A DNA stretch of 63,327 nucleotides, the filler included, from Octopus bimaculoides (taxonomy: Eukaryota): NCBI RefSeq assembly GCF_001194135.2. It is 4 parts of 4 records of this genome, joined end to end, with 100 filler letters (N's around TTAATTAATTAA, not from the genome) between each part and the next. Parts side by side here need not be neighbours in the genome. Positions count along the whole stretch, not along the records: positions 60,028 to 63,327 come from NW_026325853.1; 3 more parts are not named here. One strand, 5' to 3'. Each line of letters starts with the position of its first letter. Positions within the stretch are counted from its first letter, which is position 1. The translations under genes were made by a program, and so were the position numbers. The notes below the pieces were generated by a model. The model saw only the letters and a program-made list of their open reading frames with translations. It made no database searches and had not been told where the DNA came from. Of this stretch, positions 28,245-63,327 are shown piece by piece.

Positions 28245-29343
28245 TGCGGAGTACCCAAAAATAACCAGAATCGTTAGCACACCGAGTGAAATGCTAAGCG
28301 GTATTTCGTCTGCCGTTACGTTCTGAGTTCAAATTCCGCCGAGGTCGACTTTGCCTTTCATCCTTTCGAGTTCGATAAATTAAGTACCAGTTACGTACTG
28401 GTTCGATGTAATCGACTTAATCCGTTTGTCTGTCCTTGTTTGTCCCCTCTCTGTGTAGCCCCTTGTGGGCAATAAAGAAATAATAAACATTTTCCGTGGG
28501 ACAAGCCCGTTGTAGTTCAGGCTTTCGCCGCTAGAACCCCCTTGATGCGACCATCAGGCAACAGTCTGCCGACCGACGTTGTCCTTTGTGGTCATACTGT
28601 CACGTGGTGCGTCTTTGTGTTGCAGTGCTTCTCTTCTGTTCGTCGATTTTTGCGGTGGCTGAAACGTGTAATTTCGTTTCCTGCTGGGGAAAACGGAGGC
28701 CATAACAGTACCATGCTTCAAACAGCTTACAAGGATGTTGCCATGAGCAAAACACAAGTTTATGAGTGATTTTCGCTCTTTAAGAATGGCATTTGTCGCT
28801 TGAAGACCAACCTCGTTCAGAACGACCGTTGACATCTCGAAGGAATGAAAACATCACGAATATTGATGAGCTAATTTTGGAAGGCTGTCAGCGAACAATT
28901 GATGAACTTGTTGATATGACTGCTGTGTCCTGGAGCTCCTGCCAACGAATTTTGAGCGAGGAAATGCGAATGAAAAAAAGTTACAGCAAAATTTGTGGCT
29001 CCCTTGCTCATGGAAGATCAAAAGCAGTAACGACTGAATGCGTGTTGTGAACTGAAAGAACAGTCAGAGGTTCATCCGGATCTTTTTTCGAAGATCATCA
29101 CTGGTGACAAAAGCCGGTGCTACGTAATTTGCAGATATGGAAGAGGTGAAGAAAAAATGACGGAGGTGTTAAAAGGTATCACTTCACATGAGTTCCAAGA
29201 CTGCTTCAAACGGTGGAAAACGCACCTGGACCAATGAATTGCTTCAAATAGAGAATATCTTGAAGGCGATAAAAGTGTAAACATGTAAAACTAAGTGAAT
29301 AAAATATTGCGAATTTCCGGTTTCTTTTGGGTACGCTCTCGTA
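28245..29343 (+). mobile_element. mariner transposon, internally deleted, both TIRs present, SINE A nested at 28266-28482
   Basis: TIRs GTACCCAAAAATAACCAGAAT (28251..) and ATTTCCGGTTTCTTTTGGGTAC..CTCGTA (..29343); translation MLQTAYKDVAMSKTQVYE*F..LEDQPRSERP..RTIDEL..RILSEEMRMKK, KIITGDK, FADMEEVKK..FKRWKTHLDQ*IASNREYLEGDK. Confidence 0.92.
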
Positions 29344-60027: not shown

Positions 60028-60235
60028 CAACCTTTTCAGTTGGGGCTGGAAGTCCTGGTTGTGGGCAAACAGCTTCTGCAGACGGGGTTGAAAGTCCTGA
60101 TTCTCTGCAAAGAGCTGGTGCAGTCGGGGGTTCGCCGTTAGTAGACTCTTCAGCTCGTTCATCCCCATTTTTGCGGCCCGCGATAACAGGTTCTCCAAAG
60201 CAGCCAATCCGTACTGGAGAGAGGCAGGGTTGGTC
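60028..60235 (-). CDS. Candidate internal coding exon of an unidentified host gene, with a 14-aa tandem repeat (partial, runs into a gap)
   Basis: Branch-like TACTTAAC (60268-60261), pyrimidine tract, TTCAG|G acceptor; frame TNPASLQYGLAALENLLSRAAKMGMNELKSLLTANPR-LHQLFAENQDFQPR-LQKLFAHNQDFQPQ-LKRL. The two 42-nt units differ by five synonymous third-position changes in this frame. Confidence 0.72.
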
Positions 60236-60381
60236 CTGAATAGAAGAGAGAGAAAACGGGGTTAAGTAACGTTTATGCATAATGTGGTGGGGAAGGAGAT
60301 AGATGGGTAAGGGGAGAGGAAGAGAAAAGGAAGGGGAGAAGAGAGAGAGAGAGAGAGAAAGAAAGGTCAAGTAAACATTTA

Positions 60382-60534
60382 CATCATCATCATTTAATGT
60401 CTCTTGTCCATGCTGGTATGGGTTGGACAGTTTGACAGAAGACTATTCCAAGCTCCGCTGGCTACTTGGCATGGTTTCTATGGCTGGATGCCAACCACTG
60501 TACAGAGTGCATTGGGTGCTTTTTATGTGGCACC
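60382..60534 (-). mobile_element. 3' end of an RTE-like non-LTR element or derived SINE with (GAT)n tail
   Basis: CATCATCATCATTTAATGTC..CCATGCTGGTATGGGTTGGACAG..GGCTGGATGCC..GTGGCACC; short-repeat tail typical of RTE-type ends (family assignment from recall). Confidence 0.55.
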
Positions 60535-60591
60535 AAATTGAAAAATCCGAAGATTCAGAAAAATTATATTACATATATATAAGAGGGTTTA

Positions 60592-60798
60592 CCACTAAGT
60601 GTACATTCGTTTTGCTAGAAGTAGACCACCTATGGGTCTGACCACTAAGAAAAGATTGTTCTCAAGAAAATTCAGCAAATACCAGAATATTGTTATATTT
60701 CGGGATGGTGTTTGCTGAGTTTTCTTGAGAACAGTCTTTTCTTAGTGGTCAGACCCATAGGGGATCTACTTCTAGCAAAATGGCTGTCCACTTAGTGG
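60592..60798. mobile_element. Foldback MITE, ~93-bp inverted arms (right end in a gap)
   Basis: 60592-60684 pairs with 60706-60798. Confidence 0.85.
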
Positions 60799-61329
60799 AC
60801 NNNNNNNNNNNNNNNNNNNNNNNNNNNNNNNNNNNNNNNNNNNNNNNNNNNNNNNNNNNNNNNNNNNNNNNNNNNNNNNNNNNNNNNNNNNNNNNNNNNN
60901 NNNNNNNNNNNNNNNNNNNNNNNNNNNNNNNNNNNNNNNNNNNNNNNNNNNNNNNNNNNNNNNNNNNNNNNNNNNNNNNNNNNNNNNNNNNNNNNNNNNN
61001 NNNNNNNNNNNNNNNNNNNNNNNNNNNNNNNNNNNNNNNNNNNNNNNNNNNNNNNNNNNNNNNNNNNNNNNNNNNNNNNNNNNNNNNNNNNNNNNNNNNN
61101 NNNNNNNNNNNNNNNNNNNNNNNNNNNNNNNNNNNNNNNNNNNNNNNNNNNNNNNNNNNNNNNNNNNNNNNNNNNNNNNNNNNNNNNNNNNNNNNNNNNN
61201 NNNNNNNNNNNNNNNNNNNNNNNNNNNNNNNNNNNNNNNNNNNNNNNNNNNNNNNNNNNNNNNNNNNNNNNNNNNNNNNNNNNNNNNNNNNNNNNNNNNN
61301 NNNNNNNNNNNNNNNNNNNNNNNNNNNNN

Positions 61330-61545
61330 AAAAGAAATAGCAGCCGGACACACGTGACCAAGGCTGTGTAAAGAGAAAGAGTAGCAGAGGGAAAAGAAGG
61401 GGAGGAAGTAGAATAAAAGTGAGCAACGAGAGGTAGAGAGGGAGAGAGAGATAGTAGTAGTAACGGTGAGTGGCGAATATATGATGAGAATCGTTCGTTG
61501 TCCGAGAAAGACGGTTTTGCAATTCCTTGGTGAACGACCTGCACA
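61330..61545. mobile_element. Second copy of the purine-rich repeat seen at 40380-40500
   Basis: GTGACCA..GTGTAA..GGAGGAAGTAGAA..GTGAGCAACGAGAGG is shared. Confidence 0.6.
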
Positions 61546-61559
61546 AGTCGTTTGTTTGT

Positions 61560-61790
61560 GCTGTGGATTAACTCACTCTTTCCAGCAGATCAACGTTGCC
61601 TGAACAAGGTGCTCAATGTGACACACTATCAGAAGCTGAAGGGGTCGCAGAGCAACGGAAAATGAAGTGCTGTGCTCCGAGACACAAAGCATTGCCCAGT
61701 AACTACAGTTGAAACTATGATCCTACAAAATGGCGAGTGCAAAACCGCAACTGCTAAGTCAAGCATTTCACCAACTCTCACCAGCAAAAT
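61560..61790 (-). mobile_element. Old SINE family C-like copy
   Basis: GAGCAACGGAAAATGAAGTGCTGTGCTCCGAGACACAAAGCATTGCCC resembles the reverse complement of the family C core. Confidence 0.5.
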
Positions 61791-61955
61791 ATATAAAATA
61801 TTAAAGTTTTAAACATATAATAATAATAATAGTAATATTTACCCAGCTTTGGGAAAGTTGAAAAGGTTTGCTAAATCTTTCTCATATTGGCCCATCTGAA
61901 AATAAAAAACAGTGCAAGTCATTAGAAACACTACACACACCCACACACACACACA

Positions 61956-62550
61956 TACAATGTGTGATGGGTAAATTGTCGCCATTTTATATTTTTAATT
62001 TCATGCCTGCTCATTGTTTGTTTTTGATTTTGTCAGCTACACAGTATAGTAGGGTCAGCAGAGCACTGCACTGTCTGTGAGAAAAAAACAGCACCTTGAT
62101 GCAATTTGCTGTACCAGAAATTTGGAAACGGCATGCTGTACTGCTTGGCATTCACATGCCAGAAGCTGCGATACAAACACTTCATAGTGTTTGGGTGTCA
62201 ATCTGAGGACATGTAGCAAGAGTGATAAAACCCTCTTTATTACGTCTGGGGTGGAGTTGAATGAAAGACCCAAAAAACTCCTTGTAACACCAAAGATGAA
62301 CGGAAGGCAAGGATTATGGCAGCATTCACCAACTTAAACAAGGAGACCATCCAGAAGAGTTGCAGGAGATTCCAAAGCATTCTGGGGGCTGTGGTTGAAG
62401 CCAATGGCGATTTTATTGAATGAATTTACTCTTTAGTATTTCAAAGCTGATTTTATGTAATTTTGGTAAATATATCTGTTGAAATGAAATGTCAGTGTTA
62501 TTTTCATATTTGCATAATTTAGACGACAATTTATTCACCGCACCCTGTGC
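61956..62550 (+). mobile_element. Internally deleted Tc1/mariner-superfamily (maT/DD37D-like) element with both TIRs
   Basis: N-terminal EIWKRHAVLLGI..CLGVNLRT fused to C-terminal YYVWGGVE..TKDERKARIMAAFTNLNKETIQKSCRRFQSILGAVVEANGDFIE*; TIR cores TAAATTGTCG (61972-61981) and CGACAATTTA (62524-62533). Confidence 0.82.
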
Positions 62551-62856
62551 ATATATATATATATATATATATACAAATAANNNNNNNNNNNNNNNNNNNN
62601 NNNNNNNNNNNNNNNNNNNNNNNNNNNNNNNNNNNNNNNNNNNNNNNNNNNNNNNNNNNNNNNNNNNNNNNNNNNNNNNNNNNNNNNNNNNNNNNNNNNN
62701 NNNNNNNNNNNNNNNNNNNNNNNNNNNNNNNNNNNNNNNNNNNNNNNNNNNNNNNNNNNNNNNNNNNNNNNNNNNNNNNNNNNNNNNNNNNNNNNNNNNN
62801 NNNNNNNNNNNNNNNNNNNNNNNNNNNNNNNNNNNNNNNNNNNNNNNNNNNNNNNN

Positions 62857-63102
62857 AAGGATAGGAGGATTCTATAAGGAAGCTGGGTCTACCAACCTCG
62901 GGACCAAGAGATTGCTGTTGGTCACCTCCACGCTTACTCATAAACACAAAGCGCTTGTCCTCGTTGGGGCCGGAACCCTTGGCCCCATGCGCCATCTTCT
63001 GTTGGTTGGATTTGTCACTGCCACCTCTGTCGTTTGCCTCGTTGGATGACTTTGTGGGTGTTTGTTCAAGGAAGGGTCCTTCGAGTTGGTTCTTTGGCCG
63101 CT
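62857..63102 (-). CDS. Candidate coding exon of an unidentified host gene (partial, runs into a gap)
   Basis: GACTAAT branch-like motif (63161-63155), long (CT)n tract, GGCAG|AG acceptor; open frame xRPKNQLEGPFLEQTPTKSSNEANDRGGSDKSNQQKMAHGAKGSGPNEDKRFVFMSKRGGDQQQSLGPEVGRPSFLIESSYP; GC-richer than flanks, no TE motif recognised. Confidence 0.55.
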
Positions 63103-63121
63103 CTGCCAATGAAAATCAGAA

Positions 63122-63153
<32 letters not shown>

Positions 63154-63327
63154 CATTAGTCACCTTGGAAACATAAGTTGGAAGATGCCTCTCTCATTCC
63201 TGCATCTTCCCATCATCACTGCACACAGAGCTAATGATACCAAGCTGGGGTCTTTAAGCAGAGGAAATTAATATCAAAAATTTTACCGGTGAGTGTGTTA
63301 AATTTTAAGGCACAATAAGACAATGAC

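What the first reader, a model, noticed from the sequence alone, without database searches (positions are those of the whole stretch)
60028..60235. Unidentified protein exon with a selectively constrained 14-aa repeat (LxxLFAxNQDFQPx)
Units CTG CAC CAG CTC TTT GCA GAG AAT CAG GAC TTT CAA CCC CGT and CTG CAG AAG CTG TTT GCC CAC AAC CAG GAC TTC CAG CCC CAA differ at five third positions without changing the amino acid (L, A, N, F, Q). A third unit starts (LKRL) at the gap. This favours this frame over the alternative open frame (DQPCLSP..). The acceptor and branch site are strong. I cannot match the peptide to any family I know, so it may be lineage-restricted. Basic residues at unit borders would also fit a processed precursor (speculative).
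Basis: partly seen in the sequence, partly recalled or inferred. Interest (0 to 1): 0.7.

Follow-up and report, generated by a model that had tools for sequence, protein, structure and literature searches.

The report
Coding exon of cephalopod-only RRM protein
The stretch is a real protein-coding exon on the minus strand, the start of what is a large last exon in the one known relative, in a gene so far seen only in cephalopods. Its short 14-residue repeat is an old, conserved helical motif, not a string of hormone peptides, so it is real but fairly ordinary.

Summary
On the minus strand, 60235..60028 reads TNPASLQYGL…LHQLFAENQDFQPR LQKLFAHNQDFQPQ LKRL. Two 42-nt units (60123-60082 and 60081-60040) are followed by the start of a third. 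They differ at 11 bases, 8 of them at third codon positions and 5 purely synonymous. In-frame pS is 0.67 and pN 0.16; the other two frames give the reverse.

The exon is the third of three consecutive minus-strand exons in the piece: 63102-62897, 61895-61843 and 60235-60028 (cut by the piece's edge). Their splice phases fit one reading frame.

The joined 155-aa peptide has one significant match among 1.84 billion representative proteins. It is GAB1609074.1, a 1771-aa hypothetical protein of the octopod Argonauta hians (E 9.4e-14). The match runs colinearly across all three exons. The Argonauta gene has introns at the same positions and phases. Its TNP… exon is the 4.4-kb last exon.

That protein starts with an RRM, has no obvious signal peptide, and is mostly low-complexity. 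Its repeat region has three full units plus a shortened one, without conserved basic borders.

The peptide-precursor idea is not. Function remains inferred: a small helical module in an RNA-binding protein. Interest is modest.

The parts
62897..63102 (-). Exon A (206 nt). Acceptor cattggcag|AGCGG, with 2 nt completing a codon. Donor CCCGAG|gttggt, phase 0. Encodes RPKNQLEG…NEDKRFVFMSKRGGDQQQSLGPE.
   Evidence: It aligns to residues 243-291 of Argonauta P0001, including the conserved DKR-V-M motif. The orthologous Argonauta exon has the same entry and exit phases.
61843..61895 (-). Exon B, a 53-nt mini-exon. Acceptor ttttattttcag|ATGGGCC, donor CCCAAAGCTGG|gtaaata. Encodes MGQYEKDLANLFNFPKAG, with the final Gly codon split across the intron.
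   Evidence: Argonauta has a 44-nt mini-exon ending CCCAAAGTTGG|gtaaata, with the same donor position and phase.
60028..60235 (-). Exon C, the finding. Acceptor ctattcag|G at 60235, coding frame from 60234. It is cut at 60028 by the edge of the piece. In Argonauta the equivalent exon is the roughly 4.4-kb last exon.
   Evidence: tblastn gives 45% identity over all 69 codons to L001 24232-24438.
60236..60275 (-). Splice acceptor region of exon C: a polypyrimidine tract and a TACTTAAC-like branch-point candidate.
   Evidence: Direct reading.
60124..60153 (-). Shortened leading repeat unit LKSLLTANPR (10 aa).
   Evidence: It aligns to LQKFLRANSG in Argonauta and shares the L..LL..N pattern with the full units.
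60082..60123 (-). Repeat unit 1, LHQLFAENQDFQPR.
   Evidence: The orthologous Argonauta unit is LLHLLQKNTDFHQR (6 of 14 identical).
60040..60081 (-). Repeat unit 2, LQKLFAHNQDFQPQ.
   Evidence: The orthologous Argonauta unit is LLKIFAHNGGVLPS (7 of 14 identical, sharing K3 and FAHN).
60028..60039 (-). Start of repeat unit 3 (LKRL), cut by the piece's edge.
   Evidence: It corresponds to LERIFAKPGQLYPD in Argonauta.

Best explanation
The finding is the 5' part of a coding exon on the minus strand. In the one relative available, the equivalent exon is the large last exon. The gene is an orthologue of Argonauta hians GAB1609074.1, and no relative was found outside cephalopods.

Shown here:
- The exon, its frame and its acceptor are real.
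- It is the third of three colinear exons in the piece.
- The 14-residue units already existed as distinct units before the two lineages split, and they have been kept under purifying selection.

Inferred from the relative only:
- The full protein has an N-terminal RRM, possibly two.
- About 70 residues of linker carry a conserved DKR-V-M motif.
- An all-helical segment of about 110 residues contains the repeat.
- A tail of more than 1300 residues is low-complexity, rich in Gly, Asp and Arg, and ends in an Arg/Gly-rich stretch.
- Together these suggest an intracellular, probably nuclear, RNA-binding protein.

Inferred mechanism of the repeat: each unit is a short amphipathic helix (L1, L4 and F/L5 on one face, capped by N8) followed by a turn (x-D-F-x-P-x) whose Phe packs back and whose Pro starts the next helix. 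Three full units plus the shortened unit would stack into a small helical module. That module would serve as a protein-protein docking or self-association surface next to the RNA-binding part. It is not a set of peptides to be cut out.
For: Frame and exon:
- The open frame is shown.
- The substitution pattern between units is frame-specific.
- The phases of exons A, B and C are compatible and give one 155-codon reading.
- Exons are 52.7% GC against 39.9% for the introns.

Homology:
- There is a single hit, P0001, at E 9.4e-14. It aligns query residues 26-156 to its residues 243-373.
- BLASTP gives 39% identity over 133 columns, running without a break across both exon junctions.
- P0001 is GAB1609074.1 of Argonauta hians.

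Gene structure:
- In locus L001 the three orthologous exons have the same intron positions and phases.
- The TNP… exon runs from 24232 to the stop at 28632.

Constraint across species:
- Window against Argonauta gives pS 0.73 (saturated) and pN 0.37.
- Differences by codon position are 32, 20 and 43.
- Unit-specific residues are shared by orthologous units: FAHN and K3 in unit 2, DF..R in unit 1.

Protein context:
- RRM_1 matches residues 20-86 of P0001 at 22.2 bits when scanned alone, above the 20.7 cut-off.
- There are weak nucleolin, eIF3G and SRSF RRM matches in the PDB.

Helical character:
- Both AlphaFold models are all-helical, with short helices over each unit.
Against: - The function is not shown by any experiment or by any characterised homologue.
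- There is only one relative, and it is a computed gene model. Its joining of the RRM exons to this region is not verified here.
- The RRM exons lie outside the piece, so their presence in this species is assumed.
- The structure models are of low confidence (pLDDT 62.8 and 47.7), and Foldseek found nothing significant (best E 1.3).
- No transcript of this species was available.
- Units 1 and 2 are more alike within the window (10 of 14) than either is to its orthologue (6-7 of 14). Some past homogenisation in this lineage, or faster divergence in Argonauta, is needed to explain that.
Confidence: 0.72

Rival explanations
1. The exon belongs to a secreted prohormone or neuropeptide precursor. 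The repeated units would be cut out at the basic residues on their borders.
For: R or KR residues occur near unit borders (…QPR|L, LKRL). Exon A carries KR…KR (DKRFVFMSKRGG).
Against: - The orthologous protein starts MASGQKTNPACMSLSKDR…, with no hydrophobic signal, and carries an RRM.
- Border residues are not conserved as basic: R/S/D in Argonauta against R/R/Q here. LKRL corresponds to LERI.
- No unit ends in an amidation Gly.
- The repeat sits inside a 1771-aa, mostly low-complexity protein.
Confidence: 0.03
2. It is not a functional exon. It would be a chance open frame, a pseudo-exon or a transposon-derived ORF.
For: Two of the three frames are open over the 208 nt. The surrounding introns contain repeat elements.
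Against: - There is a significant colinear match to an annotated gene in another cephalopod, with conserved intron positions and phases.
- The substitution pattern is third-position-biased in one frame only.
- The peptide matches no Pfam family, transposon-related or otherwise.
- There is only one hit in 1.84 billion proteins, where a transposon ORF would give many.
Confidence: 0.03
3. The likeness of units 1 and 2 reflects a recent duplication or gene conversion in this lineage, not selection on each unit.
For: The units are 10 of 14 identical within the window. The orthologous Argonauta units 1 and 2 are only 3 of 14 identical to each other. Window units are 6-7 of 14 identical to their orthologues.
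Against: - The synonymous difference between the units is already pS 0.67, close to the saturated between-species value of 0.73, so any homogenisation is old.
- Unit-specific residues are shared with the orthologous units, which places the duplication before the species split.
- Replacement differences remain four times rarer than silent ones.
Confidence: 0.1
4. The helical segment is a distant STI1/DP-type domain, as in Hop, Hip, SGTA, ubiquilin and Rad23. These are bundles of short amphipathic helices that hold hydrophobic client segments. The protein would then be a co-chaperone-like adaptor.
For: The resemblance is to a pattern recalled from memory only: N-P/N-Q-punctuated short helices of the form …ANPRLHQLFAENQDFQPRLQKLFAHNQ…. 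The models show a run of helices of 6-11 residues across the repeat units.
Against: - Pfam gave no match to any family, STI1-type or other, even at E up to 10.
- There was no PDB sequence match with either a single sequence or a profile.
- Foldseek found no significant match. Its best, non-significant hits were armadillo-like or generic helical proteins.
Confidence: 0.12

Closest known systems
GAB1609074.1, hypothetical protein Ahia01_001192800 of Argonauta hians (1771 aa)
   Same: It gives a colinear match across all three exons (39-45% identity, E 9.4e-14). Intron positions and phases are the same. It has the same LxxLFxxN… periodic units, with unit-specific residues shared.
   Different: - It is very diverged: 54% nucleotide identity in exon C, with silent sites saturated.
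- Unit 2 has lost the QDFQ turn (NGGVLP).
- The mini-exon is 44 nt rather than 53 nt.
- The protein is itself uncharacterised, so it lends no function beyond its RRM.
STI1/DP-type helical domains (Hop, Hip, SGTA, ubiquilin; Rad23 XPC-binding domain)
   Same: Both have short amphipathic helices separated by N/P-containing turns in an all-alpha segment of about 60-110 residues. This is established knowledge recalled from memory.
   Different: There is no detectable sequence or fold match. The 14-residue period and the conserved D-F-x-P turn are not features I know from those domains. The context here is an RRM plus a long disordered tail, not TPR, UBL or UBA domains.
RRM proteins with long low-complexity tails (nucleolin-like and SR-like proteins)
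   Same: The relative has an N-terminal RRM, with weak best matches to nucleolin, eIF3G and SRSF RRMs. Its tail is rich in Gly, Asp and Arg and ends in an Arg/Gly-rich stretch.
   Different: The matches are weak (E 0.02-0.8 in the PDB). There is no orthology to any named RRM protein. The helical repeat segment has no counterpart in those families as far as tested.

Membership tests
Orthologue group of Argonauta hians GAB1609074.1 | Significant, colinear protein similarity | tested here: met
   E 9.4e-14 against 1.84 billion representatives. The match covers query residues 26-156 and is unbroken across exon junctions.
Orthologue group of Argonauta hians GAB1609074.1 | Same intron positions and phases | tested here: met
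   Three introns have matching phases (1, 0, 2). The junction sequences are near-identical: CCCAAAGYTGG|gtaaata and cag|GACCAAYCC.
Orthologue group of Argonauta hians GAB1609074.1 | N-terminal RRM and long low-complexity last exon | not testable with these tools
   Both lie outside the 3.3-kb piece. The upstream exons are beyond 63327, and exon C is cut at 60028.
Prohormone / neuropeptide precursor | N-terminal signal peptide | tested here: not met
   The relative's N-terminus, MASGQKTNPACMSLSKDRTIAV…, has no hydrophobic core and runs straight into an RRM. This was judged by reading, not by a predictor. The window's own N-terminus is not available.
Prohormone / neuropeptide precursor | Conserved mono- or dibasic cleavage sites flanking each repeated peptide | tested here: not met
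   The borders are R, R and Q in the window but R, S and D in Argonauta. KR in LKRL corresponds to ER.
STI1/DP-type helical domain | Match to the family's sequence profile | tested here: not met
   Pfam hmmscan at E up to 10 gave no family, for either the window peptide or the Argonauta segment.
STI1/DP-type helical domain | Fold similarity to solved members | tested here: inconclusive
   The models are of low confidence (pLDDT 62.8 and 47.7). The best Foldseek hit against the PDB has E 1.3, and no STI1 entry appears among the top 50.
Armadillo/HEAT-type alpha-solenoid | Repeat units of about 40 residues with two or three helices | tested here: not met
   The unit here is 14 residues with one short helix. 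The top Foldseek hit, a designed armadillo protein, is not significant (E 1.3, TM 0.33).
Transposon ORF | Transposase, RT or integrase domain, or many copies | tested here: not met
   There is no Pfam hit and a single relative in the protein library. The genomic copy number in this species could not be tested.

The most novel reading that the evidence does not exclude
The roughly 110-residue helical segment, with its 14-residue LxxLFxxN-x-DF-x-P units, would be a previously undescribed protein domain that arose within cephalopods. It would be joined to an RRM and a very long disordered tail, forming a lineage-specific scaffold of ribonucleoprotein assemblies. Such a scaffold could be relevant to the unusual RNA biology of coleoids.
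Probability: 0.2. Interest if true: 0.5.

Novelty: new member of a known kind. Interest (0 to 1): 0.27.

Why it matters
The report settles an annotation point. An unannotated-looking stretch is a genuine exon of a fast-evolving gene, so far seen only in cephalopods, with a defined frame, splice sites and two upstream exons. It removes the more exciting reading of a repeated neuropeptide precursor.

The remaining interest is modest. The helical repeat segment matches no described domain family. Together with the Argonauta protein it defines a small orphan family of RRM proteins that could be followed up in cephalopod genomics.

Tried and rejected
- Three word-indexed protein searches found nothing: the window peptide, Argonauta residues 1-417, and a two-sequence alignment. 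That tool did not return P0001 even when queried with P0001's own sequence, so its silence is not informative.
- Pfam gave nothing on the window peptide or the Argonauta helical segment.
- PDB sequence searches with a single sequence and with a profile gave only chance-level hits, E 0.5-1.
- Foldseek of the better model against the PDB had a best E of 1.3.
- A scan of JGI metagenome contigs with back-translated motifs matched 448 stretches, none confirmed.
- A full-text search for NQDFQP found 0 papers.
- The alternative frame DQPCLSP… was rejected. It does not fit the phases of exons A and B, and the Argonauta match is in the other frame.
- The alternative donor for exon A (ATGA|gtaagc at about 62933) was rejected. 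It would leave phase 1, which gives a stop codon in exon B, and the Argonauta alignment continues through the following residues.
- The possible mariner-like remnant in the intron could not be confirmed.

Full report
**What is there**

The piece 60028-63327 contains two assembly gaps, 60801-61329 and 62581-62856. On the minus strand, 60234..60028 translates without a stop to TNPASLQYGLAALENLLSRAAKMGMNELKSLLTANPRLHQLFAENQDFQPRLQKLFAHNQDFQPQLKRL. A second frame is also open (DQPCLSP…). The third frame has stops.

Unit 1 is at 60123-60082 and unit 2 at 60081-60040. Twelve bases of a third unit (LKRL) follow before the piece ends. Tandem Repeats Finder reports the same array: period 42, 2.1 copies, 78% matches, score 106.

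**Is the pattern more than chance?**

- The units differ at 11 of 42 bases.
- Eight of these are at third codon positions (binomial P = 0.009), and five are purely synonymous.
In the two other frames the order is reversed, with pS 0.11-0.13 and pN 0.27-0.31.
- Fourteen codons are few, and Fisher's test on the counts gives only P of about 0.09. The within-window test is therefore suggestive but not decisive.

**Gene structure in the window**

Reading the minus strand upstream shows two more exons.

| Exon | Coordinates | Length | Acceptor | Donor |
|---|---|---|---|---|
| A | 63102-62897 | 206 nt | cattggcag\|AGCGG | CCCGAG\|gttggt |
| B | 61895-61843 | 53 nt | ttttattttcag\|ATGGGCC | CCCAAAGCTGG\|gtaaata |
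| C | 60235-60028 | 208 nt (cut) | ctattcag\|G | not in the piece |

The phases fit. Exon A ends in phase 0. Exon B ends with two bases, GG, and the G at 60235 completes that Gly codon. The spliced reading is 155 codons without a stop. The exons are 52.7% GC and the introns 39.9%.

**Relatives**

- A full HMMER scan of 1.84 billion representative proteins with the joined peptide gave exactly one hit, P0001. It is 1771 aa, with E 9.4e-14 and 41% identity, aligning query residues 26-156 to its residues 243-373.
- BLASTP shows the alignment running unbroken through both exon junctions:
  - DKRFVFM aligns with DKRLVCM.
  - LANLFNFPKAGTNP aligns with LNNLLNFPKVGTNP.
  - GLAALENLL aligns with GLSSLENLL.
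  - KLFAHN aligns with KIFAHN.
- P0001 is GAB1609074.1, hypothetical protein Ahia01_001192800 of the octopod Argonauta hians.
- That genome and its annotation were published with the vampire squid genome. [quoted passage not shown]
- The genomic locus was fetched as L001.
- The Argonauta exons equivalent to A, B and C have introns at the same positions and phases. The junctions are nearly identical: CCCAAAGTTGG|gtaaata and gacag|GACCAATCC.
- The TNP… exon continues as one open frame of about 4.4 kb to the stop codon, so it is the last exon.
- Window against Argonauta over exon C gives 45% amino-acid and 54% nucleotide identity, with pS 0.73 (saturated) and pN 0.37. Differences by codon position are 32, 20 and 43.

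This is good evidence that the exon, frame and acceptor are real, and that the sequence has been under purifying selection for a long time.

**The repeat seen across species**

Argonauta reads LQKFLRANSG | LLHLLQKNTDFHQR | LLKIFAHNGGVLPS | LERIFAKPGQLYPD, and the periodicity then ends. The array is therefore short and fixed: one shortened unit plus three full units.

Orthologous units share unit-specific residues. Unit 2 has K3 and FAHN in both species, and unit 1 has DF..R. The units were therefore already distinct before the two lineages split.

Units 1 and 2 are more alike within the window (10 of 14) than in Argonauta (3 of 14). This needs either old homogenisation here or faster divergence in Argonauta. 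The high silent divergence between the units (pS 0.67) rules out a recent event.

**What kind of protein**

- P0001 begins MASGQKTNPACMSLSKDR… and has no hydrophobic signal sequence (read directly).
- Residues 20-86 match Pfam RRM_1 at 22.2 bits when scanned alone, above the 20.7 cut-off. In the whole protein the match has E 0.0027.
- PDB sequence matches are weak and are to nucleolin, eIF3G and SRSF RRMs.
- A second RRM-like stretch at about residues 150-220 is my reading only. Pfam does not detect it.
- After the helical segment, the protein is more than 1300 residues of low-complexity sequence. This includes Ser/Thr/Gly-rich runs, MREGEAR repeats, Gly/Asp/Tyr-rich repeats and an Arg/Gly-rich end.
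- This is the make-up of an intracellular RNA-binding protein, not a secreted precursor.

**The helical segment**

- It matches no Pfam family.
- It gives no PDB sequence match.
- AlphaFold models built from only two sequences are all-helical, with one short helix per unit, but confidence is low (pLDDT 62.8 and 47.7).
- Foldseek found nothing significant (best E 1.3).

My mechanistic reading is inference. It proposes an amphipathic helix with L1, L4 and F5 on one face, an N8 cap, a D-F-x-P turn, and units stacking into a small docking module beside the RRM. A resemblance to STI1/DP-type domains is recalled from memory, and every test available here failed to support it.

**Rivals**

- The precursor idea fails on three counts: no signal peptide in the relative, no conservation of basic border residues, and the protein context.
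- A transposon or chance ORF is excluded by the colinear orthologue with conserved introns and by the single hit in the protein library.
- Recent gene conversion is unlikely given the silent divergence between the units.

**Limits**

- There is only one relative, and it is a computed gene model.
- No transcript of the source species could be consulted.
- The RRM exons and the rest of exon C lie outside the piece.
- The word-indexed protein search failed to return P0001 even for its own sequence, so it says nothing about absence in other cephalopods.
- The representative library collapses relatives above 50% identity, so other octopod orthologues may be hidden behind P0001.

**Verdict**

This is a real, conserved coding exon of an orphan RRM-protein gene, so far seen only in cephalopods. 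Its repeat is an old helical motif. Novelty is low to moderate: it is a new member of an uncharacterised family that already has an annotated hypothetical protein.

Noticed in passing
window 60592-60798: An almost perfect hairpin in the intron. The arms are 93 nt (60592-60684 and 60706-60798), 90% complementary, with a 21-nt loop. It folds at -88 kcal/mol, z-score -21. It directly abuts the assembly gap that starts at 60801, so it is either a foldback or MITE-like element or an assembly artefact.
   Followed up: partly
window 61957-62548: Imperfect 25-nt inverted repeats (61957-61981 and 62524-62548) enclose 542 nt with plus-strand ORF scraps such as …ETIQKSCRRFQSILGAVVEANGDFIE. From memory these recall the C-termini of Tc1/mariner transposases. 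Pfam and PDB sequence searches gave nothing, so this stays a guess at an intronic transposon remnant.
   Followed up: partly
window 63118-63153 and 60336-60362; L001 about 23120-23140 and 24200-24228: CT/GA dinucleotide microsatellites lie just upstream of the minus-strand acceptor of exon A and about 100 nt upstream of that of exon C. CT-rich runs (pure CT before the mini-exon, CTCA then CT before the last exon) also precede the equivalent acceptors in Argonauta. The polypyrimidine tracts appear to be built partly from CT repeats in both species.
   Followed up: no
window 60380-60540: An intronic stretch (…tgtccatgctggtatgggttggacagtttgac…ggcatggtttctatggctggatgccaaccact…) looks to me, from memory only, like a cephalopod SINE-type dispersed repeat. 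It was not tested.
   Followed up: no
P0001 (Argonauta hians GAB1609074.1), residues about 565-635 and 800-900: The relative's tail contains its own short tandem peptide repeats: MREGEAR/MREGVPR heptads, and YHP…DDREMYGGGG units. They are unrelated to the 14-residue repeat of the finding.
   Followed up: no
tool behaviour: The word-indexed protein search did not return P0001 when queried with P0001's own residues, although the cluster look-up shows P0001 is in that collection. Negative results from that tool should not be read as absence for eukaryotic proteins.
   Followed up: partly
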